DNA of 64,000 bases from IMGVR_UViG_3300035698_035366:232120-296119, one strand, 5' to 3'; positions 3,571 through 63,422 are shown, counted from the stretch's first letter. Translations and numbers: made by a program. The notes: generated by a model from the letters alone, not told the origin.

Positions 3571-4017
3571 ATGACAAACATTACAACAAACCGCCGCGCG
3601 AAATTTGACTACGAACTGGAACAATCCTACGAAGCGGGGATTGAGCTCGTTGGTTCAGAAGTTAAGACTCTTCGAACTCGTGGAGCCAGCATTGTCGAAT
3701 CATATGTAGAGGTCAAAGACGACGAATGTTGGTTAATTAATGCTAACATTGAACCATATGAACCAGCTAGGATTAATCATGAGCCAAAGCGTCGCCGGAA
3801 GCTTTTGTTGCACCGGCGTGAAATCGACCAGATGACAGTGAAAGTTCAACAGCGTGGATATACTATTGTCCCAGTAAAAATGTATTTTAATTCCAGAGGC
3901 CGAGTGAAGATTGAAATTGCTATCGGCAAGGGGAAGCATACATATGATAAGAAAAGGGCTATTCGTGATCGTATAGTTGATCGAGAAACCCAACGAGAGA
4001 TGAAGAATTTAGGTTAA
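3571..4017 (+). CDS. smpB: SsrA (tmRNA)-binding protein SmpB
   Basis: NRRAKFDY, EAGIELVGSEVK, RRRKLLLHRREI, GKGKHTYDKK; ATG 6 nt after a TATAAT box (leaderless). Confidence 0.97.
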   Translation: MTNITTNRRAKFDYELEQSYEAGIELVGSEVKTLRTRGASIVESYVEVKDDECWLINANIEPYEPARINHEPKRRRKLLLHRREIDQMTVKVQQRGYTIVPVKMYFNSRGRVKIEIAIGKGKHTYDKKRAIRDRIVDRETQREMKNLG

Positions 4018-13301: not shown

Positions 13302-13390
13302 AAGGGTTGATCCTGCCCGCGGTATCAAACCCGTGGTCTTGAATAAGGCAGGAAGCAGGACGAGGGGAGCGTTACCTCCAACCTTTGCTA
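13302..13390 (+). tRNA. Atypical Trp-like tRNA with rearranged D region and ambiguous anticodon loop (tatcaaac)
   Basis: aagggttg/caaccttt acceptor, G73; tcctgc pairs with gcagga 3' of the anticodon arm. Confidence 0.5.
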
Positions 13391-13396
13391 ATTTAT

Positions 13397-13476
13397 AGGG
13401 GTGCCTGTATCGGTGAACTAAGCCGTCTCCAAAACGGTGCTTCGGCCTGGGAGTTCGAATCTCTCCACCCCTGCCA
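13397..13476 (+). tRNA. tRNA-Trp(CCA)
   Basis: gccgt-ctCCAaa-acggt; G73-CCA; odd D arm. Confidence 0.85.
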
Positions 13477-13485
13477 ATATAATAT

Positions 13486-13570
13486 GGGAAGGTAAAGCTA
13501 GTGGCTCTAGCAAGTGGTCTGTAAAACCACTCTCTTCGGGGGCGAGGATCGATACCTCACTTTCCCACCA
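13486..13570 (+). tRNA. tRNA-Tyr(GTA)
   Basis: gtggt-ctGTAaa-accac; long variable arm; CCA. Confidence 0.88.
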
Positions 13571-15235: not shown

Positions 15236-15320
15236 GGGTGGCGCAGCTAATGCGATGTCTGGGACCGACGCGGGCTCTTAATCCGTGAACCAAGGGGTTC
15301 AATTCCCTCGCCACCCGCCA
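15236..15320 (+). tRNA. tRNA-Lys(CTT) with expanded D region
   Basis: gcggg-ctCTTaa-tccgt; gggtggc/gccaccc; ~25-nt D region. Confidence 0.7.
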
Positions 15321-16409: not shown

Positions 16410-16493
16410 GCGACGCGTAGGCGAGAAGGTTCTGCCGCTGGGCTTCCACCCCAGTCCGAAAGGTGTAGGGTTCGATTCCCTCGCGTCGCTCCA
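16410..16493 (+). tRNA. tRNA-Gly(TCC) with 8/4 fold and long variable arm
   Basis: gcgacgcg/cgcgtcgc 8-bp acceptor, 4-bp T stem aggg/ccct, ctggg-ctTCCac-cccag, U73-CCA. Confidence 0.75.
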
Positions 16494-17902: not shown

Positions 17903-17980
17903 GCATCTGTATCCCTGTCCGCTGCGAACGGATTGAAAGGTAATTGGATCATGCACGTTCGAATCGTGTCAGGTGCGCCA
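17903..17980 (+). tRNA. tRNA-Arg(GCG) with D-loop displaced 3' of the anticodon arm
   Basis: gcatctg/caggtgc; only 7 nt before gtccg-ctGCGaa-cggat; taattgga after the arm; canonical T arm; CCA. Confidence 0.72.
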
Positions 17981-17990
17981 AAACAAATAG

Positions 17991-18147
17991 GTGAACGGTA
18001 GTAGCCTTTGATGTGCGGATGGAGTTCGATTCTCCTACTGGATGGGTTCGACTCCCACCCGGGCTTGGTTTAGCAAAACATCATACGCGAGAGCGTGTCG
18101 CGTCAACATTGGTCGATCCAACGGAAACCAAGGATTGAATGGCGCAC
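17991..18147 (+). ncRNA. Structured RNA with two tandem T-arm hairpins
   Basis: ggagttcgattctcc and gggttcgactccc side by side; tgatgt/acatca and cttggttt/aaaccaag pairings. Confidence 0.5.
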
Positions 18148-18158
18148 TTTTATTTTAT

Positions 18159-18237
18159 GCGTCTGTATGCCGCCGGTTTTCGAGACCGGAGAAAGCTAAC
18201 TGGACACATGCGGGTTCGACTCCTGCCAGGCGCGCCA
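18159..18237 (+). tRNA. tRNA-Arg(TCG) with D-loop displaced 3' of the anticodon arm
   Basis: gcgtctg/caggcgc; ccggt-ttTCGag-accgg; agctaactgga after the arm; CCA. Confidence 0.72.
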
Positions 18238-18253
18238 AGTTATAAATACTTAC

Positions 18254-18922
18254 ATGATATATAATGAATTATTAGAAGGCCGCGACGCATCACTTTGGCA
18301 TGGTATACAAATGAAGTATGCCCATGAGATTCTATCTAATATGAAAATAGAAGGTCGAACAACTCAAAGATATTGGCCTGACGGAATGCGGAGAAGAGAA
18401 GATGATCCAGACTATGAAGATAGCTTTTGGATGAAAGGCATTTCAACAACTCGTGATCCGTTATATGCATCTAGTTGGGGAAGCTTAGTTTTAGAATTAG
18501 ATCAAGCAGCGATAACACGGAATTACAAAATTGTTCCGTATAGCTGGGGATTCCATATGAAGGGTGCCAGCACTAAGAGAGAACGAGAAGAATTTATTAT
18601 TCTGTCGATGACTGGCAAGTCTATGAAAGATTATGAAAAAATATCAAATGATTCCATGCAAACTGATAACCCAACAAGTGCAATGAATTTATGGTATGCC
18701 CCAGAAGGAAAAGCATTAGATTTGAACAAATGCTTAAAAGGTGTATACATATCGGATTCAACATTTGAAATATATGGCGAAGATAATGATGAGATACAAT
18801 ACATCATGAAACATCCAAAATTCAAAGGATTGCTTCCAAGCACTATTCGTTCGGACAATCCAGAAAAGAAAGCTGCACGTAAAGAATTACGTGACCGAAT
18901 TAATAGTCAAATCAAAAATTAA
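18254..18922 (+). CDS. Hypothetical late protein (possible ADP-ribosyltransferase-like fold)
   Basis: LWHG...GISTTRD...EREEF pattern; leaderless after TATAAATA. Confidence 0.55.
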   Translation: MIYNELLEGRDASLWHGIQMKYAHEILSNMKIEGRTTQRYWPDGMRRREDDPDYEDSFWMKGISTTRDPLYASSWGSLVLELDQAAITRNYKIVPYSWGFHMKGASTKREREEFIILSMTGKSMKDYEKISNDSMQTDNPTSAMNLWYAPEGKALDLNKCLKGVYISDSTFEIYGEDNDEIQYIMKHPKFKGLLPSTIRSDNPEKKAARKELRDRINSQIKN

Positions 18923-20097: not shown

Positions 20098-20106
20098 AAC
20101 AAAAAT

Positions 20107-20187
20107 CCTCCGGCCGCTGGGACGGGTTGTGGTCTTCTAAGCCCTTGTCTTTGAACTAGCTAGGTTCGATTCCTAGACGGAGGACCA
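20107..20187 (+). tRNA. Atypical tRNA-Arg(TCT)
   Basis: ggt-ctTCTaa-gcc; mini D arm; long variable region; ctaggttcgattcctag; CCA. Confidence 0.6.
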
Positions 20188-20870: not shown

Positions 20871-20940
20871 GCCTTGACCGACTGGACCGGAGTTTGGCCT
20901 CCTAAGCTAAAACCTGCAGGTTCGAATCCTGCTCAGGGCA
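20871..20940 (+). tRNA. tRNA-Arg(CCT), shortened D arm
   Basis: ttggc-ctCCTaa-gctaa; gcaggttcgaatcctgc. Confidence 0.75.
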
Positions 20941-21003
20941 CGAAAAATAACATTTGATAATGAAATAATAATATGTTAAATTATGTTTTGATAGGAGAAC
21001 AAA

Positions 21004-27662: not shown

Positions 27663-28526
27663 ATGACAGGATACACAACAAGAATTGCACCAAGCCCAAC
27701 GGGTGATATGCACCTGGGGACCGCTCGCACGGCTTATTTCAATTGGCTGATGGCTCGAGCATCAGGTGGTAAATTCATTCTTCGTATTGATGATACTGAT
27801 CTCGCAAGGAACGATCAGAAACATATTGATATTATTCTAGAGACAATGGAGTGGCTTGGGTTAACTTATGATGAGCTAGAATATCAGAGCAAACGTATCG
27901 ATGTGTATTATCGAGCAACAAATGATCTTGTCAAAAAGGGATTTACGACTACATTAGAGAATGGTGCAATTGCTGTTAATCTATCTTCTGTGATTGATTT
28001 CCCAACCACATGGCGCGATGAGATTTCAGGTGATATTAATATCACATCAACCAACCACGATCAAACAGATGGTATGATTCTTATTAAAGGAAATGGATAT
28101 CCGGGTTACAATTGGGCTTCGGTGGTTGATGATGTTGATCTTGGTGTAGATTATATTATTCGAGGCCATGATCATATCACAAACACTTCAAGCCAAGCAA
28201 TTCTTTATAAGTTACTAGATAAGCCATTGCCCAAATTTGCGCATGTTGGTTTAATTCACGCCAATAAAAAGAAAATGTCCAAGCGTGATGGTGCTGCGAG
28301 TATGATGCAGTATAAAGCCGATGGGTATGATCCAGACGCATTGTTGAATTTTATGCTTCGTCTTGGATGGGGGCCAACTATCGACGATAAAACGACTAAG
28401 ACTATTGACAAGGATCGTGCATTAGAGTTGTTTATTAATGGTGGACGAATGCGATCCGCCCCATCAAATTTAGATACAGCAATGCTAAATTCATATGATA
28501 GAAAATATAAGGCTAGAAAGAAATAA
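27663..28526 (+). CDS. Minimal glutamyl-tRNA synthetase-like protein (catalytic domain only; GluQ-RS-like)
   Basis: RIAPSPTGDMHLGTARTA, LRIDDTD, IRGHDH, KMSKR; 287 aa, no Zn-cysteine cluster, no anticodon-binding domain. Confidence 0.88.
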   Translation: MTGYTTRIAPSPTGDMHLGTARTAYFNWLMARASGGKFILRIDDTDLARNDQKHIDIILETMEWLGLTYDELEYQSKRIDVYYRATNDLVKKGFTTTLENGAIAVNLSSVIDFPTTWRDEISGDINITSTNHDQTDGMILIKGNGYPGYNWASVVDDVDLGVDYIIRGHDHITNTSSQAILYKLLDKPLPKFAHVGLIHANKKKMSKRDGAASMMQYKADGYDPDALLNFMLRLGWGPTIDDKTTKTIDKDRALELFINGGRMRSAPSNLDTAMLNSYDRKYKARKK

Positions 28527-31924: not shown

Positions 31925-32001
31925 GCGCCCGTAGCTCAGCTGGATAGAGCAACAGATTTCTAATCTGTGGGTCGCAGGTTCAAATCCTGCCGGGCGCACC
32001 A
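31925..32001 (+). tRNA. tRNA-Arg(TCT)
   Basis: Canonical; acaga-ttTCTaa-tctgt; CCA. Confidence 0.95.
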
Positions 32002-38128: not shown

Positions 38129-38203
38129 GCCCTTTTAGCTCAATGGATTTAGAGCGTATCCCTCCGAAGGATAAGGTCGCGGGTTCGATCCCCGCCAAGG
38201 GCT
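38129..38203 (+). tRNA. tRNA-Arg(CCG)
   Basis: tatcc-ctCCGaa-ggata. Confidence 0.88.
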
Positions 38204-38706
38204 CATGAAAAGCGAAAAGGAAATAAGTGTACCTGAAAAAACACTAGAGGATTTCTATGCTAAGTGCGGAAAAATCCTTGAAATAGAGCATACTTGGGTA
38301 ACACCACATGTTCGAAAAGGCGGGCGTTGGAATCGCAAACTTGGTAATGGTCGTTTCTCAGGATACGGAGTAATTCGTCCCTGGGGATCAGGTTATCAAG
38401 TTATGAGTCGATCCAATGGTACCAAATTGTTTAACACTCAACAAGAGGTTTATGAGTTCCTCGAAAGATAAAACTCTTTTTAGATCGAATTTAATATCCC
38501 ATATTTTGACCAGTTTTGAAACGGACAATTTGTTCCTGTTCCAACTGCTTGAAATCAAGGTGATCATCTTCCGGAATAAGTACCGTTGCCAGTGTCGACC
38601 ATGTTCCAGCGTCGACGACGCATTCAATGCCAAACAAGCGCATTGCAACAACCAGGCCAATCGTTCCAACTTGTTCTTCAATCATTTTATTCTCCAGTTC
38701 CAAAAT

Positions 38707-47756: not shown

Positions 47757-48965
47757 ATGAAATTTAGAAATTTGGTGTTTATCACCGCATTAATTGCATT
47801 TATTGCACCAGCGGGCGCTCAACCACATAATCCTGATACCACAACATCAATCGAAACCATTGATGAATCTTCAAAAGATTATCAACAGCGTATCTTGTTC
47901 AATTACATACTTGATTATATCCAAAAAAATCATTACAAAAAAGCCACAACCGAGGAATTGGTTCAAGCAGCTATTCAAGGTATGATGCGATCTCTTGACG
48001 CTCATTCGTCATATACCGCTCCAAAGGATGCAGAAAAACAACGAAATGATTTACGCGGTGAAATATCTGGTATCGGCGCTACTTTAACAATTGATAAAGA
48101 ACGTGGAAATAGTCTTACTATTGTTGACGTTCTACCTGGAGGACCAGCAGACAAAGCTGGTATAAAAGCCGGTGACATAATTGATGAAGTGGATGGTCAT
48201 CCTACTAGTTTAGTTGATCTTCAGGGAGCAATTGAAAAAATCACAGGACCAGTTGGCACAGAGGTTAAATTAAAAATTATTCATAAAGGTAAAAAGGAAT
48301 GGTTTACGCTTACAAGAGCAGTTATTAAAAAGCCAATTGTTCGGTTTGAAATATTACAAGATGATATTGCATTTGTACGTTTAGAGCAATTTACACCAAA
48401 TGCAAGTGAACAGATTCGTAAAGCATGGAAAAATATGACAGCTATTACTCCAGCAACGAATATAAAGGGGATTATCTTAGACCTTCGATATAACCCAGGC
48501 GGTTTACTTGATCAAGCAGCAACCATCGTTGATATGTTTTCTTCCCATGGAACAGCGGTAATAGTTAAGGATGGAAACGGTGTTGAGACAGAACGATTTG
48601 ATGTTAGTAAGGAAGTGTTCTTCCCAGAAAATATACCATTAGTTATTCTTATTAATCGTTATTCGGCCTCGGCCTCAGAAATTGTTTCCGGCAGTTTAAA
48701 ACAAATGGGACGAGCATTTCTTATTGGAGAAAAGACTTATGGAAAGGGATCAGTACAAACAGTTTCACCAGTATATAATGGTGGGTTGTTAAGATTAACC
48801 ATGCAGCATTATTTTACGCATAATGATACTAGCCCACACGATGTGGGAATTGAGCCCAACTTGGCAATTATTAACGATGTTAAAAAAACAATCCGCCGCA
48901 CTGGAAAAATACCATTCGATGATCAATTACGGGCAGCTATTAATCATATCAATGCATCTAAATAA
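47757..48965 (+). CDS. S41 carboxy-terminal processing protease (CtpA-like)
   Basis: Signal peptide; LDAHS; PDZ (GIG, PADKAGIKAGD); DLRYNPGGLL; SASASEI; TYGKGSVQ. Confidence 0.95.
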   Translation: MKFRNLVFITALIAFIAPAGAQPHNPDTTTSIETIDESSKDYQQRILFNYILDYIQKNHYKKATTEELVQAAIQGMMRSLDAHSSYTAPKDAEKQRNDLRGEISGIGATLTIDKERGNSLTIVDVLPGGPADKAGIKAGDIIDEVDGHPTSLVDLQGAIEKITGPVGTEVKLKIIHKGKKEWFTLTRAVIKKPIVRFEILQDDIAFVRLEQFTPNASEQIRKAWKNMTAITPATNIKGIILDLRYNPGGLLDQAATIVDMFSSHGTAVIVKDGNGVETERFDVSKEVFFPENIPLVILINRYSASASEIVSGSLKQMGRAFLIGEKTYGKGSVQTVSPVYNGGLLRLTMQHYFTHNDTSPHDVGIEPNLAIINDVKKTIRRTGKIPFDDQLRAAINHINASK

Positions 48966-51579: not shown

Positions 51580-52275
51580 ATGAAAAGAATAATGTATGAA
51601 CTAGTAGAAATCAAGCGATCGCATAATATTTTGTGTGCATTTATGAAACAGGATCCAATTCATCCTCTTCATGGTGCTGCAAATCTTAGTCACAGGTTTT
51701 CTGCATCACATCGCAATTATGCATATGTTAATGAGAATAATGATCCGGTAATGATTTGTTGCATCAAACTATCCCATAAACCAATTGGCAAAATGGATGA
51801 TATTTTTAATACCGTCGACGATTATAATGACAAGGACGCCAAAATTAGAAATGTCCTAACATTTTATAGTATATTTAGGACAAAGGTTGAAAGTGTAGAT
51901 ATTGGAAAAGATTTGGGTTTATCGTTAATGATGGATGTAACAAAATTGATTCACAGCGAATTTGATGAAATCAAGGTTATAAGAACACTAAGTCCGATAC
52001 CCACATTATCTGAACATTGCGCAAACCTCGTTGGAGAAGAAGCTGTTAGCAATTATATAAAAAGCAAACGAGATCCTGTTGCTAAATTCCATCTGCGTAA
52101 TAAGGCGAAAATGTCGGGAGTTATATTTAATGCAGATTGCAGCAAACTACGCCAGGAACAAAGTTATGGGTGGATGGTAGCATATGATTATTCTGATTGT
52201 TCATTATTTAAAAAAGATGAAGAAGTTGCTGAAGAACTCAAGGAAGTAATACCAAGTAAAGTAGAAGGTAAGTAA
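51580..52275 (+). CDS. Malonyl-CoA decarboxylase-like (catalytic GNAT domain only)
   Basis: DPIHP, TFYSI, TLSPIP, DPVAKFHLRN.A, AD.S....QSYG.MV.Y.Y. Confidence 0.8.
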   Translation: MKRIMYELVEIKRSHNILCAFMKQDPIHPLHGAANLSHRFSASHRNYAYVNENNDPVMICCIKLSHKPIGKMDDIFNTVDDYNDKDAKIRNVLTFYSIFRTKVESVDIGKDLGLSLMMDVTKLIHSEFDEIKVIRTLSPIPTLSEHCANLVGEEAVSNYIKSKRDPVAKFHLRNKAKMSGVIFNADCSKLRQEQSYGWMVAYDYSDCSLFKKDEEVAEELKEVIPSKVEGK

Positions 52276-57605: not shown

Positions 57606-58094
57606 ATGACTGAAACTTGGTATAAATCTTCGGGAACGATTGTTTATGATCCCCCGCGTCCGAAGCTTCGAAAGCGACCGGACCATTGGGTTGTAATCAA
57701 TGCTGATTATGAAATCGCCCGTTATTTCCGCTATTGGGTGGATAAGGAAGTCTTGAACCCTCTTGGTTTTGAGAAGGGTGGTCTCGCTGAGCCCAGCTGG
57801 GGAGCCCATATTAGTATCATTCGCGGCCTTAACGATATACGCAATTGTCCGTTTGATTGGAAGACTATCTGGAAGCGTTATCACGGACAGAAAGTTGAGT
57901 TTGAATATAGCAATAAGGTCCGTTATACTGGCGATACTACTGGGCACGATCGTCCGGGAGATTATTGGTTCGTTGAGGTTCGTTGCCCGTTAGCGGAACA
58001 GATACGCGACGAATTCAAGTTGATCCGTGATTGGTCGCTACATCTTACGATTGGTCGGACTTGGCCTGATCGCGTTGTAAAGCTCAAGAAGTAG
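57606..58094 (+). CDS. 2H phosphoesterase
   Basis: Two HxS/T motifs: AHISII and LHLTIG. Confidence 0.8.
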   Translation: MTETWYKSSGTIVYDPPRPKLRKRPDHWVVINADYEIARYFRYWVDKEVLNPLGFEKGGLAEPSWGAHISIIRGLNDIRNCPFDWKTIWKRYHGQKVEFEYSNKVRYTGDTTGHDRPGDYWFVEVRCPLAEQIRDEFKLIRDWSLHLTIGRTWPDRVVKLKK

Positions 58095-58797
58095 TATCGA
58101 GGTGCTTCCAGGTTCGTCCAGCAATGATGTCCTGGATAGTGCCTTGAGCTACGCCATATTCCTTACACCAAGCATTTAATATTTTACCACGGTGACCTAT
58201 CGGAGTTGTTTTATATGTTTGAGCAGAAGCCTTAATAATGCGGACAGCTTGCTCTGTCATCTTGGCAAGATAGCAATTTTCACCTTGGACTTTCTTTCTA
58301 CCTTCATAATATTTGGCAGTTTGTTTTTTGCCATACATTGGATTGCCAGATCCTTTTCTTTGATCACTTATTTCTTTCTTTCTTTCTTTGGAAAATTTAC
58401 AACCTTGTCTATTTTGCAAAGCGTTACCTTTCATTCGTTTCCGGAATTCGTCGCGTCTTTTTTCAGCCCCGTCAAGAAGCCAAGGATTAGGAGGATTGAC
58501 TCCTAAGGCAATATTCATCAAACAACCTTGAGGTTCGATTTCACGCCTTCCAAAGAATAATATCAATTCTTCCTCTATCCTGATCGCCTCATTTTCTTCT
58601 AATCCTGTATGGACTAATCGAATTATTGGTTGCTGCCCAGAGCGGAGTATCTTTTGGAGTTTTCGATATTTACGTTCGTTAATAGTTGTATCAACAGTTT
58701 CGTTTAGATGAGCCTGCCAGCGTTTATTACATCCTTTTCCGATGTAGAATGGTTTAAGATCTGTCGGATCTATATAGACATATACATAATATTTCAT
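58084..58797 (-). mobile_element. GIY-YIG homing endonuclease (NUMOD3-type repeats)
   Basis: YYVYVYIDP....FYIGKG...R...H; GSGNPMYGKK; inserted antisense between rIIA and rIIB. Confidence 0.9.
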
Positions 58798-59569: not shown

Positions 59570-61201
59570 ATGAGCAAGCTTGATGCTGCAATCGCTGGTA
59601 GCGATTATATCACCGTGACAATCGATGGTGTGACACATTCACTCACCGAATCACACCCAAATTACGAAAAAGCTCGAGAAGCTCTAAAGATTCGGGATGC
59701 TGATCTGCTCTCGACCCTCGTTGATATTCCAAAATCCATTAATACGTTCAGTGGTGGTAAGGTCACCGTTGAAGGTGGTGTGATTATGTTTTCGGGGAAA
59801 GCCATTCATAACAGCCTAACACGGCGTATGATTGAGATGATGAAGGAAGGTTTTGACATCACATCTCTTGCCAATTTCTTGAAAAACATCCAGGGCAATC
59901 CAAGCTTCCGGGCAGTGAATGAACTTTATACGTTTTTGGAAGAGAACAAGCTTCCAATTACGGATGACGGGCATTTCCTAGCTTACAAGCGTGTTCGATC
60001 CAACTTCACAGATATCTTTACTGGAACATTTGATAATAGCCCAGGTAAGACGTGCGCGATGCCTCGTAACCAGGTCAACGAAGATAAGGACCAAACTTGC
60101 TCGGAAGGTCTACACTTCTGCTCAATCGAATACCTACCGCACTTTGGTTCGTATGGCGGAAATGACAACATCGTCATCGTTAAGATTAACCCAAGGGACG
60201 TTGTTTCGATTCCTTCCGATTACAACAATGCCAAGGGTCGAACTTGTCGCTATGTGGTAGTTGACCAATGGATGGGTTGGGAAGAGTTCGTCAAGGAACA
60301 GAAGGACTTCTTCGACAAGAGCGTAGTTAATGATTATACACCACCGTCCACCAAGGGCTCTGATGGTGAGACGCTAATGGACTTTGATCAAGCCGCTGAT
60401 CTCATTTGTGGTCATACACAGAACCCAGCTTCGTCTCTCCGTAAGCGTATCAATCGCGGAACCATTCGTACGGTAAATGGTCAGGTTGTTGTTGACGGCT
60501 TTTATACGCCACCAGTAACCATTGACGAAACACCTTCTAAGGTCGATATGACCGATGACGAAAAGAAGGATACTCGCGCCTGGAAGAATGGTTGGACTGC
60601 TGGCCGCGATGCAGCCTTAAATGATGTTTATTCACCAACGAGTGGTGTTGAAGCCCACCTAACAGACGAGCAGCGGCAAAATCCAGGACTTTACACAGAA
60701 GGATTTAGGGCCGGCTATGAAGGTATACAACCCATTGAGGTCATTGACGATGTCATTGATGCAAAGACCGGTGAAGTTAATTCCATTGAATGGCATCGGG
60801 GATTTTCCGAGGGAATTGTTATGGCTGATAAAGACATTGTCGATAATGATGTTTACGGTGATGGGTATGATGATATTGCTGGAGAACCTGGTGATAGAAA
60901 CGCTGGTTTTATTGTTGGTTATGATGAAGCATATGAGGCTTGGGTCAAGAGCGGAAAGGGTCGTCGAGCAGGCGCATCAAACAGTGAAGATTCAAAGCAT
61001 ACCGACCGTTCTTGGATCCAAGGAATCACTGACGGTATGAGTTCAGGAAAGATGGATAAAGTGTCTGGAAAAACGAAAGATGGTTGGCATAGGCCACCTG
61101 ATAATGTTTCACGCACGGATTATTACACTGAAGCATATACTCTTGCATATGAGCGAGTGTGGGACAATAGTGGGTGGAACTGGTTTGACGGCGACCGGTA
61201 A
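59570..61201 (+). CDS. rIIB: RIIB protein with a long repeat-containing C-terminal extension
   Basis: NPSFRAVNELY.FL, ITDDGHFLAYK, MPRNQV, CSEGLH, INPRDVVSIPSDYNNAKGRTCRY. Confidence 0.93.
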   Translation: MSKLDAAIAGSDYITVTIDGVTHSLTESHPNYEKAREALKIRDADLLSTLVDIPKSINTFSGGKVTVEGGVIMFSGKAIHNSLTRRMIEMMKEGFDITSLANFLKNIQGNPSFRAVNELYTFLEENKLPITDDGHFLAYKRVRSNFTDIFTGTFDNSPGKTCAMPRNQVNEDKDQTCSEGLHFCSIEYLPHFGSYGGNDNIVIVKINPRDVVSIPSDYNNAKGRTCRYVVVDQWMGWEEFVKEQKDFFDKSVVNDYTPPSTKGSDGETLMDFDQAADLICGHTQNPASSLRKRINRGTIRTVNGQVVVDGFYTPPVTIDETPSKVDMTDDEKKDTRAWKNGWTAGRDAALNDVYSPTSGVEAHLTDEQRQNPGLYTEGFRAGYEGIQPIEVIDDVIDAKTGEVNSIEWHRGFSEGIVMADKDIVDNDVYGDGYDDIAGEPGDRNAGFIVGYDEAYEAWVKSGKGRRAGASNSEDSKHTDRSWIQGITDGMSSGKMDKVSGKTKDGWHRPPDNVSRTDYYTEAYTLAYERVWDNSGWNWFDGDR

Positions 61202-61274
61202 TCACAAATGGAAATATAATGCACGTTTAGGACCCGGCGGGTCTAGGGGGCTCGGGGAAACTCGAGCCTCTTTT

Positions 61275-62468: not shown

Positions 62469-63422
62469 ATGAAACTAATCGCCGGTAACTCGAATCCCGA
62501 ACTTGCAGAAGAAATTGCTGACTATTTGGATACGCATTTGGCAGATGTTAAAATTTCCAAATTTTCAGATCTTGAAACAAATGTTGATATTCGAGAAAAT
62601 GTTCGCGGTGAGGATGTTTTCATTATTCAATCTACATGTTCCCCAGTTAATGAACATTTGATGGAACTTTTAATTACAATCGATGCATTGCGTCGTTCAT
62701 CAGCAAAGAGAATAACGGCCGTATTGCCATATTTTGGTTATGCACGCCAGGACCGAAAGTCTGCACCAAGAACACCAATTACGGCTAAGCTTACTGCCAA
62801 CTTGCTTGAGACTGCTGGCGCAAACCGAATCCTTACAATGGATTTACACGCTGATCAGATCCAGGGATTTTTTGATATTCCCGTTGATAATTTGTATGCT
62901 CTACCAATTCTTGTAAAGGATATTCGGAAACGACTAAATGTAGATAATATGGTTATCGTATCACCTGATGTTGGTGGTGTTAAACGTGCCCGGGCCGCCG
63001 CCAAAAAACTCGGATGTGAGCTTGCTATTATTGATAAACGACGTGAAAAGACCAATGAATCCGAAGTAATGAATATTATTGGTAACGTAGAAGGACGTGA
63101 ATGTGTCATGATCGATGACATGGTTGACACGGCTGGTACACTCGTTAATTCGGCTCGAGCACTTGCAAACGCTGGAGCATTAGCGGTTGATGCTTACGCT
63201 ACACACGGAGTTCTTTCAGGGCCAGCAACAGAACGTTTGAATGAAAATGCCGATGTATTGCGGTCGTTAACAATCACCGACTCTATTCGTTATCCATTGT
63301 CACCAAAGGCACCCATTACTGATGTTGCAAAAAATATCCGAAAAGTTACAGTTTCAACTTTACTTGCCAAGGCAATTGGGCGTATAGCCAATGAAAGCAG
63401 TGTCTCGGAGTTACTCAACTAA
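62469..63422 (+). CDS. prs: Ribose-phosphate pyrophosphokinase
   Basis: [47 protein letters not shown]. Confidence 0.97.

What the first reader, a model, noticed from the sequence alone, without database searches (positions are those of the whole stretch)
17903..18237. tRNAs with the D-loop transplanted to the 3' side of the anticodon arm
SEEN: two Arg tRNAs (GCG 17903-17980, TCG 18159-18237) have intact acceptor and T arms and CCA, but only ~7 nt between the acceptor and anticodon arms. A D-loop-like segment gaaag(g/c)taa(t/c)tgga, with GG and a following A resembling the Arg identity element A20, lies after the anticodon arm. The 5' linker covaries with it (tatCC...aaGG vs tatGC...aaGC). 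The Trp-like gene at 13302-13390 shows the same topology (tcctgc pairing with gcagga 3' of the anticodon arm). INFERENCE: an internally rearranged cloverleaf that may keep the L shape while escaping host tRNA-targeting toxins. Standard tRNA finders probably miss or mis-score these genes.
Basis: partly seen in the sequence, partly recalled or inferred. Interest (0 to 1): 0.85.

Follow-up and report, generated by a model that had tools for sequence, protein, structure and literature searches.

The report
Phage arginine tRNAs with swapped core
Two unannotated genes in this giant phage belong to a widespread phage family of arginine tRNAs whose D-arm half and anticodon arm have changed places along the strand, yet which appear to keep the contacts that hold the normal L shape; standard gene finders miss nearly all of them.

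Summary
Window 17903-17980 (anticodon GCG) and 18159-18237 (TCG) have a normal acceptor stem, anticodon arm, T arm and CCA. Only 7 nt separate the acceptor from the anticodon arm, and a D-loop-like block follows the anticodon arm.

I found 102 distinct genes of this build in 85 loci, all with Arg anticodons. They occur in viral contigs, one prophage and phage-like MAG contigs. They are also present, unannotated, in cultured phages (Wildcat, Persimmon, A3Wally, XacN1, DC31, Cp1R7A-A1).

The order fits an exchange of canonical blocks 10-21 and 22-47, and every linker keeps about its canonical length. Covariation supports all stems and a 3-bp D-stem analogue. It also supports two tertiary pairs: 19:56 (G:C 87, A:U 13) and 15:48 (A:U 92, G:C 6).

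The bacterial Arg identity elements A20, C35 and G/U36 are kept. The anticodons complement the canonical Arg tRNAs in the same arrays (1 redundant of 49; 14.9 expected). ARAGORN of 102. After the blocks are swapped back in silico it of 102 as tRNA-Arg.

Best reading: functional tRNA-Arg with a new strand topology. The toxin-escape idea is untested. The "Trp-like" element is unsupported. I found no prior description.

The parts
17903..17980 (+). Rearranged tRNA-Arg gene, anticodon GCG, 78 nt including CCA
   Evidence: Sequence. Model R1 gives 83.9 bits. ARAGORN makes no call. No Rfam tRNA hit at the gathering score.
17903..17909 (+). Gene 1: acceptor 5' strand (1-7), pairs with 17970-17976
   Evidence: 7 of 7 pairs. 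All 7 acceptor pairs covary across the family.
17910..17911 (+). Gene 1: U8 A9
   Evidence: TA in all 56 genes found by a scan that did not require it.
17912..17916 (+). Gene 1: TCCC = 3' strand of the D stem (22-25), then nt 26 (T)
   Evidence: C24:G11 and C23:G12 pair. C25.A10 is a mismatch in this subfamily. Register and covariation.
17917..17933 (+). Gene 1: anticodon arm (27-43), loop CTGCGAA, anticodon GCG at 17924-17926
   Evidence: 5 bp. All 5 pairs covary.
17934..17937 (+). Gene 1: TGAA = variable-loop analogue (44-47)
   Evidence: Length is 3-5 nt in all 102 genes.
17938..17941 (+). Gene 1: AGGT = 5' strand of the D stem (10-13)
   Evidence: Pairs with 17913-17915. The family shows 20 different D-stem combinations.
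17942..17951 (+). Gene 1: D loop (14-21) AATTGGATCA, with A14, A15, G18 G19 at 17946-17947, A20 at 17948, A21 at 17951
   Evidence: 19:56 and 15:48 covariation, A20 in 98 of 102 genes, A21 in 102 of 102.
17952..17952 (+). Gene 1: U48, partner of A15
   Evidence: 15:48 is A:U in 92 genes and G:C in 6, and A15 never occurs with C48.
17953..17969 (+). Gene 1: T arm (49-65), loop TTCGAAT
   Evidence: 5 bp. Covariation.
17970..17980 (+). Gene 1: acceptor 3' strand, discriminator G, CCA
18159..18237 (+). Rearranged tRNA-Arg gene, anticodon TCG, 79 nt including CCA
   Evidence: Sequence. R1 gives 94.8 bits. ARAGORN makes no call. Rfam tRNA scores 31.2 bits with the D arm deleted.
18159..18167 (+). 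Gene 2: acceptor 5' strand (18159-18165) and U8 A9
   Evidence: 7 of 7 pairs with 18227-18233.
18168..18172 (+). Gene 2: TGCC = D stem 3' strand (22-25), then nt 26 (G)
   Evidence: C24:G11 and G23:C12. This is the compensatory partner of gene 1's C23:G12.
18173..18189 (+). Gene 2: anticodon arm, loop TTTCGAG, anticodon TCG at 18180-18182
18190..18197 (+). Gene 2: AGAA (44-47) followed by AGCT (10-13)
18198..18209 (+). Gene 2: D loop AACTGGACACA (G18 G19 at 18202-18203, A20 at 18204, A21 at 18208), then U48 at 18209
18210..18237 (+). Gene 2: T arm (loop TTCGACT), acceptor 3' strand, discriminator G, CCA

Best explanation
The two genes encode working elongator tRNA-Arg molecules of a phage-borne family with a transposed core. 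Read 5' to 3' the order is: acceptor 1-7, U8 A9, 22-25 (3' strand of the D stem), nt 26, anticodon arm 27-43, 44-47, 10-13 (5' strand of the D stem), D loop 14-21, nt 48, T arm, acceptor 3' strand, N73, CCA. Canonical blocks 10-21 and 22-47 have exchanged places. The short D stem now closes around the anticodon arm, so the two form one continuous arm, which is how they stack in a normal tRNA. The D loop becomes the strand that leads into the T arm. The usual core contacts are kept (19:56 and 15:48 by covariation; U8, A14, A21 and G18 by conservation), so the molecule should still fold into the L shape. Shown here: the gene anatomy, its conservation, covariation of the stems and of two tertiary pairs, restriction to Arg anticodons, retention of A20/C35/G-U36, and anticodons that complement the canonical Arg set. 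Inferred: transcription and processing within the tRNA array, charging by the host ArgRS through A20 and C35, and reading of CGN codons here (AGR in other members) on the ribosome. Why this topology persists is unknown. The simplest reading is a tolerated alternative architecture that spread by descent and anticodon switching.
For: (1) 102 distinct genes in 85 loci share the order, and all have Arg anticodons (TCT 44, ACG 27, CCT 17, TCG 9, CCG 4, GCG 1). In a structure-only scan with no anticodon requirement (about 650 kb of tRNA arrays) all 56 convincing genes were Arg; most of the 12 non-Arg hits look like canonical tRNAs read in the wrong register, and a few (L002 and L061 Cys, L021 Leu-TAA) were not resolved. 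(2) In a 64-sequence alignment 96.9% of cells pair, against 63% in shuffles and 34-44% in slid controls, and 20 of 21 pairs show double changes. RNAalifold predicts the same stems without being given a structure. (3) In the 11 genes whose D-stem analogue no search pattern constrained, 30 of 33 positions pair in a register anchored on U13-A14-R15. Shuffles give 14.8 +/- 3.3 (0 of 10,000 as high), and shifts of 1-3 nt abolish the pairing. (4) Elbow pair 19:56: a scan for U56 with the D loop unconstrained gave 19 valid genes, of which 18 have A19 and one has G.U. Overall G:C 87, A:U 13, G.U 1, A.C 1, Fisher p = 2e-14. (5) Pair 15:48: A:U 92, G:C 6, G.U 3, G.G 1, and A15 never with C48, p = 7e-8. 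(6) Segment lengths are close to canonical: 2 nt for 8-9 (3 in two genes), 4 nt, 1 nt, 17 nt, 3-5 nt, 4 nt, a 9-14 nt D loop (slightly longer than the usual 7-11), and 1 nt. (7) A20 in 98 of 102 genes, with C35, G/U36 and N73 = G/U/A in 98 of 102. This matches the bacterial Arg identity set in PMC9976931. (8) Only 1 of 49 rearranged genes duplicates a canonical Arg anticodon in its locus, against 14.9 +/- 2.7 expected (0 of 10,000; the loose parse for that count let in a few false positives). In the window, GCG and TCG complement canonical CCT, TCT and CCG. (9) Swapping the blocks back in silico raises ARAGORN calls from 0 of 102 to 95 of 102, all Arg with the same anticodon; wrong rearrangements give 41-59. 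(10) Decayed copies exist for contrast (L012, L190/L200 have lost the acceptor pairing).
Against: There is no expression, processing, aminoacylation or structural data. The L shape is inferred from covariation and conservation, not modelled. I could not check that the three new backbone joins (9 to 22, 47 to 10, 21 to 48) are geometrically feasible. The D stem has only 2-3 Watson-Crick pairs: 10:25 is a C.A mismatch in 29 genes, and 13:22 is almost always U.U or U.C. G15 also occurs with U48 or G48. Many members are related, so Fisher p values overstate independence, although the A19:U56 state occurs with at least five different D-stem sequences. Part of the gene set was collected with patterns that fixed some positions. 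Two redundant cases exist (L019, and A3Wally with a canonical ACG nearby). The single-sequence folds are not more stable than shuffles.
Confidence: 0.8

Rival explanations
1. A D-armless tRNA of the mitochondrial kind. The D arm was simply lost, the little helix is just an extension of the anticodon stem, and the 3' block is a long floppy variable region with no D-loop role.
For: Rfam's tRNA model fits it that way, with the D arm deleted and an insertion in the variable region. The helix has only 2-3 pairs. D-arm loss is known in mitochondria (PMC7609411).
Against: The 3' block carries A14, R15, G18, G/A19, A20 and A21 in D-loop order. Position 19 covaries with 56, and 15 with 48. Segment lengths match canonical numbering. 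Swapping the blocks back gives a cloverleaf that ARAGORN recognises in 95 of 102 genes.
Confidence: 0.07
2. A tRNA mimic that is not used in translation, for example a decoy that soaks up a host tRNA nuclease or another tRNA-binding factor.
For: The unusual topology could keep it off the ribosome. Phage tRNAs are known to counter tRNA-targeting defences (PMC11555353, listed; not read in detail).
Against: The anticodons fill exactly the gaps in each phage's canonical Arg set. A decoy has no need for that. All ArgRS identity elements, a 7/5 acceptor/T branch and a mostly encoded CCA are kept.
Confidence: 0.07
3. The gene is rearranged but the RNA is cut and re-ligated into a canonical tRNA, as happens with permuted tRNA genes.
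For: Permuted and split tRNA genes are repaired at the RNA level in algae and archaea (PMC3978253, PMC3218864). An RNA ligase gene lies next to the tRNA array of A3Wally.
Against: The 5' and 3' ends are already in their normal places. Repair would need an internal exchange of two blocks, which means two cuts and two joins in a new order. No such pathway is known in bacteria or phages. I did not search formally for bulge-helix-bulge motifs, but the conserved helices leave little room for one.
Confidence: 0.03
4. Non-functional relics of tRNA genes scrambled by recombination in tRNA arrays.
For: Arrays are rich in homing endonucleases, and truly decayed copies exist.
Against: Compensatory changes occur in every stem across 64-102 genes in phages of many hosts. 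There are zero exceptions to Arg anticodons, and the anticodons are complementary to the canonical set.
Confidence: 0.03

Closest known systems
Canonical bacterial and phage tRNA-Arg (Rfam RF00005, class I tRNA)
   Same: 7-bp acceptor stem, 5-bp T stem with a TTCGA loop, a 5-bp anticodon stem with a 7-nt loop, U8, A14, G18-G19, A21, pairs 19:56 and 15:48, the Arg identity elements A20, C35 and G/U36, and a length of 73-80 nt to the discriminator.
   Different: The strand order of the core differs: 22-47 comes before 10-21. There is no separate D hairpin. The secondary structure is a three-way junction, not a four-arm cloverleaf.
Mitochondrial D-armless tRNAs (mammalian mt-tRNA-Ser(AGY), nematode mt-tRNA-Ser)
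   Same: A short connector between the acceptor and anticodon stems, and no D hairpin (PMC7609411).
   Different: Those tRNAs have lost the D loop and the canonical D/T-loop contacts and are flexible. Here the D loop and a D stem are retained in a new place, and their tertiary partners covary.
Circularly permuted and split tRNA genes (Cyanidioschyzon merolae, some Archaea)
   Same: The gene order departs from the canonical order of tRNA segments (PMC3978253, PMC3218864).
   Different: There the 3' half precedes the 5' half, and processing through a circular intermediate restores a canonical tRNA. Here the ends are normal, the exchange is internal, and the mature RNA is expected to keep it.
allo-tRNAs and other 8/4 or 9/3 tRNAs of bacteria and phages
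   Same: Non-canonical tRNAs found in phage tRNA clusters and missed by standard searches (PMC5389517).
   Different: Those change the acceptor and T stem lengths but keep the cloverleaf strand order.
tRNA-like structures of plant RNA viruses (TYMV-type TLS)
   Same: From my own knowledge, not tested here: an L-shaped tRNA mimic built with a non-canonical strand topology and recognised by a synthetase.
   Different: They are 3' UTR elements with a pseudoknotted acceptor arm, not free adaptors with an anticodon used in decoding.

Membership tests
tRNA (RF00005, canonical cloverleaf) | A D hairpin (stem 10-13/22-25 with its loop) lying between the acceptor 5' strand and the anticodon arm | tested here: not met
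   Only 7 nt lie there. Rfam deletes the D arm to align the gene. ARAGORN makes no call.
tRNA (RF00005, canonical cloverleaf) | A 7-bp acceptor stem, a 5-bp anticodon stem with a 7-nt loop (U33, R37), and a 5-bp T stem with a T-loop motif directly before the 3' acceptor strand | tested here: met
   97-100% paired, with covariation in every stem.
tRNA (RF00005, canonical cloverleaf) | Conserved tertiary pairs of the L-shaped core (G19:C56, R15:Y48; U8, A14, A21, G18 conserved) | tested here: met
   19:56 is G:C 87, A:U 13. 15:48 is A:U 92, G:C 6. A21 is present in 102 of 102 genes. U8 A9 is present in 56 of 56 genes of an unbiased scan. The three-dimensional fold itself was not tested.
tRNA (RF00005, canonical cloverleaf) | Score at or above the Rfam gathering threshold (29 bits) | tested here: inconclusive
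   Window gene 2 scores 31.2 bits and gene 1 is below threshold. 6 of 23 family members pass, at 29-44 bits.
Bacterial tRNA-Arg identity | A20 in the D loop, C35, G36 or U36, and N73 = A, G or U (PMC9976931) | tested here: met
   A follows G18-N19 in 98 of 102 genes. All anticodons are NCG or NCT. N73 is G 38, U 35, A 25, C 4.
Bacterial tRNA-Arg identity | Charged with arginine by ArgRS | not testable with these tools
   This needs an in vitro arginylation assay or acid-gel Northern blots.
D-armless mitochondrial-type tRNA | Loss of the D stem and D loop, with loss of the G18-G19 / T-loop contacts | tested here: not met
   The D-loop motif is retained and covaries with the T loop.
Circularly permuted tRNA gene | The 3' half is encoded upstream of the 5' half, and the mature ends are joined in the precursor | tested here: not met
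   The acceptor 5' and 3' strands are at the gene's two ends, with CCA at the 3' end.
Class II tRNA (long variable arm) | A base-paired extra arm between the anticodon arm and the T arm | tested here: not met
   The 19-20 nt after the anticodon arm form no conserved hairpin. Their first part pairs with the 5' linker instead.

The most novel reading that the evidence does not exclude
The swapped strand order is adaptive, not neutral. It keeps everything the translation machinery reads (ArgRS, EF-Tu, ribosome) but changes the backbone path through the core. A host or phage factor that depends on the canonical D-arm connectivity, such as a tRNA-targeting nuclease, a defence effector or a modification or decay enzyme, would then no longer act on it. 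On this reading it is a structural form of tRNA-level counter-defence, and a natural orthogonal tRNA scaffold.
Probability: 0.2. Interest if true: 0.95.

Novelty: new variant of a known kind. Interest (0 to 1): 0.88.

Why it matters
The cloverleaf strand order is among the most conserved features in biology. Known natural exceptions lose arms, resize stems, or permute the gene but not the RNA. If this is confirmed, the L-shaped adaptor can be built from a different strand order, and evolution has done so in a family spread across phages of Actinobacteria, Proteobacteria and other phyla.

It also has practical consequences:
- Phage tRNA inventories are systematically incomplete for arginine. 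Every cultured-phage copy I checked is unannotated.
- Covariance models need a new class for this architecture.
- The scaffold could be useful for engineering orthogonal tRNAs.
- Carriers with laboratory hosts exist, for example Wildcat in M. smegmatis and Persimmon in S. lividans, so the question is directly testable.

Tried and rejected
- **Canonical cloverleaf.** No D hairpin can be drawn. ARAGORN and Rfam confirm this.
- **Long variable arm.** There is no conserved hairpin in that region.
- **Close relatives of the window phage.** Megablast of 12 kb against deposited phages found nothing. The search for related loci with ORF 18254-18922 returned only the same contig. Synteny could therefore not be used.
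- **The two flanking 222-aa ORFs.** They are unrelated to each other and have no Pfam family.
- **ArgRS or other Arg-specific enzymes in the window.** None was found among 30 ORFs.
- **A cellular (host) version.** Pattern 1 gave 0 hits in 596 Gb of genomes. Pattern 2 gave 114 loci, of which 14 were valid by structure, 99 failed the stem tests and one lay at a contig edge. One valid locus (L171) is beside prophage genes, six sit on contigs with multi-gene tRNA arrays, and the rest are undetermined.
- **The same topology in non-Arg tRNAs.** No clear case in the DNA held; most non-Arg hits look like mis-parsed canonical tRNAs, and a few (L002 and L061 Cys-GCA, L021 Leu-TAA) were not resolved.
- **The "Trp-like" element.** Two collection scans with its stems left free found only the same phage.
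- **The spacer 17981-18158.** Its fold is not significant.
- **A clean Levitt-pair rule.** This was only partly borne out, because G15 also occurs with U48 or G48.
- **Literature.** Nine searches and three papers checked turned up no description of this topology. The library lacks most subscription journals, so prior work cannot be excluded.

Full report
**1. The observation**

Each gene has:
- a 7-bp acceptor stem;
- a 7-nt linker (TATCCCT / TATGCCG);
- a 5-bp anticodon stem with a 7-nt loop carrying U33 and A37 (anticodons GCG and TCG);
- the block N-GAAAG(G/C)TAA(T/C)TGGA plus a few nucleotides ending in AT;
- a T arm with a TTCGA loop, the 3' acceptor strand, discriminator G and CCA.

ARAGORN finds 34 tRNAs in the window but neither of these. 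Rfam's tRNA model reaches only the second, at 31.2 bits against a threshold of 29. It does so by deleting the D arm and inserting 17 nt in the variable region. So the unusual order is real, and it is seen independently by a covariance model.

**2. It is a family**

The window belongs to a 296-kb viral contig (L005/L006). The same phage occurs as a 363-kb metagenome contig.

- A pattern taken from the shared 3' block plus the T arm matched 29 loci in the viral collection. Every match had the complete architecture and an Arg anticodon.
- A covariance model built from 27 distinct genes (A1, R1) scores members at 84-100 bits and canonical tRNAs at 38 bits or less. It revealed divergent members (inspected).
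- A second pattern found about 40 more genes. Two further scans added a third subfamily.
- In all I hold 102 distinct genes from 85 loci: TCT 44, ACG 27, CCT 17, TCG 9, CCG 4, GCG 1.
- A scan that asked only for an acceptor stem, a T arm, an anticodon arm 4-9 nt after the acceptor and at least 12 nt before the T arm, with no anticodon condition, found 56 distinct Arg genes. From the printed parses, most of its 12 non-Arg hits look like canonical tRNAs read in the wrong register. A few (L002 and L061 Cys-GCA, L021 Leu-TAA) I did not resolve.

**3. Anatomy: a block exchange**

Laid out in canonical numbering, every segment has close to its canonical length:

| Segment | Content |
|---|---|
| 1-7 | acceptor 5' strand |
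| 8-9 | U8 A9 |
| 22-25 | four nt |
| 26 | one nt |
| 27-43 | the 17-nt anticodon arm |
| 44-47 | three to five nt |
| 10-13 | four nt ending in U13 |
| 14-21 | A14, R15, ..., G18, G/A19, A20, ..., A21 (9-14 nt) |
| 48 | one nt |
| 49-65 | T arm |
| 66-72, N73, CCA | acceptor 3' strand, discriminator, CCA |

Blocks 10-21 and 22-47 have changed places. The D stem (10-12 with 25-23) now encloses the anticodon arm, so the two helices form one continuous arm. The D loop becomes the strand that leads into the T arm.

**4. Tests of the secondary structure**

- On the 64-sequence alignment A2, 96.9% of cells pair. Shuffles give 63% and slid controls give 34-44%. 20 of 21 pairs show double changes.
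- For the D-stem analogue, 11:24 is CG 32, GC 29, AU 2, UA 1 with none unpaired. 12:23 is CG 46, GC 16, UA 1 with one unpaired. 10:25 pairs in 35 genes and is a C.A mismatch in the window's subfamily.
- RNAalifold, given no structure, returns the acceptor, anticodon and T stems plus 11:24 and 12:23.
- Some genes were collected with patterns that fixed one or both strands. I therefore analysed separately the 11 genes that no pattern constrained, with the register anchored on U13-A14-R15 rather than on pairing. There 30 of 33 positions pair, against 14.8 +/- 3.3 in shuffles (0 of 10,000 as high). Shifts of 1-3 nt abolish the pairing.
- Twenty different D-stem sequence combinations occur.

**5. 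Tests of the tertiary core**

If the relocated block is a true D loop, its G19 should pair with C56 of the T loop.
- One bystander gene (L067:6312) had A19 with U56.
- I then scanned the viral collection for family members with a TTTGA T loop and left the D loop free. Of 19 structurally valid genes, 18 have G18-A19-A20 and one has G19 (a G.U pair).
- Over all 102 genes, 19:56 is G:C 87, A:U 13, G.U 1, A.C 1 (Fisher p = 2e-14).
- The A:U state occurs with at least five different D-stem sequences.

Likewise the nucleotide just before the T stem behaves as position 48. With A15 it is always U (92 genes). C48 occurs only with G15 (6 genes). G15 is also seen with U48 (3) and G48 (1).

A21 is invariant (102 of 102). 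U8 A9 was present in all 56 genes of the scan that did not require it. These are the contacts that hold the canonical L shape together. Their retention is the main reason to think the fold is kept. The fold itself was not modelled.

**6. A direct test of the model**

I re-ordered the blocks in silico, as an analysis control only.
- In the natural order ARAGORN of 102.
- With blocks 10-21 and 22-47 exchanged back it of 102, full length, all Arg with the same anticodon.
- Three wrong rearrangements of the same letters give 41-59.

**7. Evidence for function as tRNA-Arg**

- The bacterial Arg identity set is A20, C35, U/G36 and A/G/U73 (PMC9976931).
- In this family A follows G18-N19 in 98 of 102 genes, all anticodons are NCG or NCT, and N73 is G, U or A in 98 of 102.
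- CCA is encoded in 78 of 102.
- In 35 distinct viral loci that also carry canonical Arg tRNAs, only 1 of 49 rearranged genes repeats a canonical Arg anticodon. Shuffling gives 14.9 +/- 2.7 (0 of 10,000 as low). The loose parse used for that count let in a few false positives (5 of 74 genes had non-Arg anticodons), which does not change the result.
- In the window, GCG and TCG complement canonical CCT (20871-20941), TCT (31925-32001) and CCG (38129-38204).
- Decayed copies that have lost the acceptor pairing (L012, L190/L200) show what relics look like.

**8. Distribution**

- The first pattern has no match in 596 Gb of bacterial and archaeal genomes.
- The looser second pattern gave 114 loci. 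Fourteen are valid by structure, 99 fail the stem tests and one lies at a contig edge.
- Of the 14, six lie on contigs with multi-gene tRNA arrays (4 to 27 ARAGORN calls: L075, L111, L117, L133, L135, L174). These look like phage contigs binned into MAGs. The other four MAG loci (L084, L104, L128, L131) show few or no other tRNAs, and I did not examine their context further.
- The other four are in cultured Hyphomicrobiales. In Limnoniibacter's relative Limoniibacter endophyticus (L171) the gene lies a few kb from a terminase and a tape-measure gene, which indicates a prophage. In Paramesorhizobium (L183) and Mesorhizobium (L094) it sits beside a chromosomal tRNA-Gln next to ppx. That is an integration-site-like setting, but no integrase or phage gene was identified there. 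The Phyllobacterium locus (L160) gave no family match, so its context is undetermined.
- Cultured phages carry it with nothing annotated under the match. Verified with R1: Streptomyces phage Persimmon, Microbacterium phage A3Wally, Mycobacterium phage Wildcat, Limnohabitans phage DC31, Xanthomonas jumbo phage XacN1 and Mesorhizobium phage Cp1R7A-A1, at 46-77 bits.
- By blastn only: WhereRU, Mildred21, Braelyn, Navo, Stanimal, Yaboi, Zooman, Cosmo, Azrael100 and EniyanLRS.
- Rfam's tRNA model passes its threshold on only 6 of 23 members tested, at 29-44 bits.

**9. Mechanism and rivals**

The best-supported reading is a working tRNA-Arg with a new strand topology (confidence 0.8).

Nothing here supports it either. 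Canonical Arg tRNAs with other anticodons sit in the same arrays, so the topology is not a general requirement in these phages.

Alternatives considered:
- A floppy D-armless tRNA. The tertiary covariation argues against it.
- A decoy. The anticodon complementarity argues against it.
- RNA-level repair to a canonical order. No known pathway exists, and the ends are already normal.
- Relics. Compensatory evolution argues against it.

**10. The "Trp-like" element (13302-13390)**

The tcctgc/gcagga pairing around a hairpin exists, so the nested topology is superficially similar. Against it:
- the inner loop is 8 nt;
- the would-be T loop (GGAGCGTTA) lacks the T-loop motif;
- there is no CCA;
- no Rfam family or R1 hit was found;
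- the fold is not significant (z = -1.53);
- the only other copy is the same phage.

It can be neither confirmed nor excluded. A better Trp(CCA) candidate lies just downstream at about 13397-13476.

**11. Novelty**

Nine full-text searches and three papers checked gave no description of this topology:
- the 2020 review of non-canonical tRNAs (PMC7609411);
- the allo-tRNA paper (PMC5389517);
- the 2023 identity review (PMC9976931).

The literature on permuted tRNA genes (listed, read only at abstract level) describes a different phenomenon.

The library does not cover most subscription journals, so prior work cannot be ruled out. I rate this a new variant of a known kind (tRNA), and a very unusual one.

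Noticed in passing
window 13397-13476 (+): A tRNA-Trp(CCA)-like gene read by eye: 7-bp acceptor stem, loop CTCCAAA, TTCGAAT T loop, CCA. It has a weak D stem and a small extra hairpin (GCTTCGGC) in the variable region. ARAGORN misses it, and it only weakly hits Rfam's tRNA-Sec model (28.2 bits).
   Followed up: partly
window 13486-13569 (+): A tRNA-Tyr(GTA)-like gene read by eye: 5-bp D stem GCTAG/CTAGC, loop CTGTAAA, a variable arm, an unusual T loop ATCGATA, and CCA. Neither ARAGORN nor Rfam calls it.
   Followed up: partly
window 15236-15316 (+): A tRNA-like gene with an 8-bp acceptor stem and a 4-bp T stem (an 8/4 build like allo-tRNAs) and the loop CTCTTAA (anticodon CTT). It gives a weak tRNA-Sec model hit of 19.6 bits.
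   Followed up: partly
window 20106-20184 (+): A tRNA-like element with a 7-bp acceptor stem, a TTCGATT T loop and the loop CTTCTAA (TCT, Arg). It has an irregular core and an extra nucleotide between the T stem and the acceptor. It gives a weak tRNA-Sec hit of 22.4 bits. It is not of the rearranged type.
   Followed up: partly
window 16410-16493 (+): ARAGORN calls an 84-nt tRNA-Gly(TCC). Rfam fits it better to the tRNA-Sec model (41.4 bits, below that family's threshold of 47).
   Followed up: no
window 17981-18158 (+): The spacer between the two Arg genes holds two T-arm-like motifs (ggagttcgattctcc and tgggttcgactccca). These may be decayed tRNA remnants. The fold is not significant (z = -0.69).
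   Followed up: partly
window 27663-28526 (+): A 287-aa protein consisting of a class I Glu/Gln-tRNA synthetase catalytic domain alone (PF00749, E = 5e-62). Its size and content resemble a GluQRS/YadB-type tRNA-modifying enzyme.
   Followed up: no
window 62469-63422, 47757-48965, 51580-52275, 58084-58797(-): Auxiliary genes in the same region: a PRPP synthetase, an S41 peptidase with a PDZ domain, a malonyl-CoA decarboxylase-like protein and a GIY-YIG/NUMOD3 homing endonuclease.
   Followed up: no
L027:8363-8711 (-): A bacterial class A RNase P RNA (254.7 bits) lies on an 8.9-kb 'viral' contig. The same contig carries Arg tRNAs for all six anticodons, one of them rearranged. It is either a phage-borne RNase P RNA or a cellular contig filed as viral.
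   Followed up: no
L075:2274-2353 and 3703-3776 (-): A tRNA array on a Bacteroidota MAG contig contains an ARAGORN call with a 4-nt anticodon (tcaa) and a tRNA with anticodon tta, which would read the stop codon UAA. The same array holds a rearranged tRNA-Arg.
   Followed up: no
L296:2494-2569 (Mycobacterium phage Wildcat, record about 61151-61226): Wildcat's rearranged tRNA-Arg(CCT) has the anticodon loop CCCCUAC. That gives C33 in place of the near-universal U33.
   Followed up: no
L295:2054-2485 and L298:2126-2488: In Persimmon and in A3Wally the rearranged gene starts about 7-11 nt after the stop of an annotated HNH endonuclease gene.
   Followed up: no
L298 (Microbacterium phage A3Wally, MZ150783.1): The record's tRNA product names disagree with ARAGORN. 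For example, genes annotated tRNA-Thr(acg), tRNA-Pro(ccg) and tRNA-Pro(cct) are called Arg with anticodons acg, ccg and cct. It looks as if anticodons were translated as codons.
   Followed up: partly
L012:1665-1738; L190 and L200: Decayed copies of the rearranged gene. The 3' two-thirds are intact but the acceptor pairing is lost. In L012 the copy sits directly after a canonical tRNA-Arg(TCT).
   Followed up: partly
L015:6578-6966, L044:6503-6806, L058:9015-9318, L072:5763-6138: tmRNA genes lie inside or next to the phage tRNA arrays that carry rearranged Arg genes.
   Followed up: no
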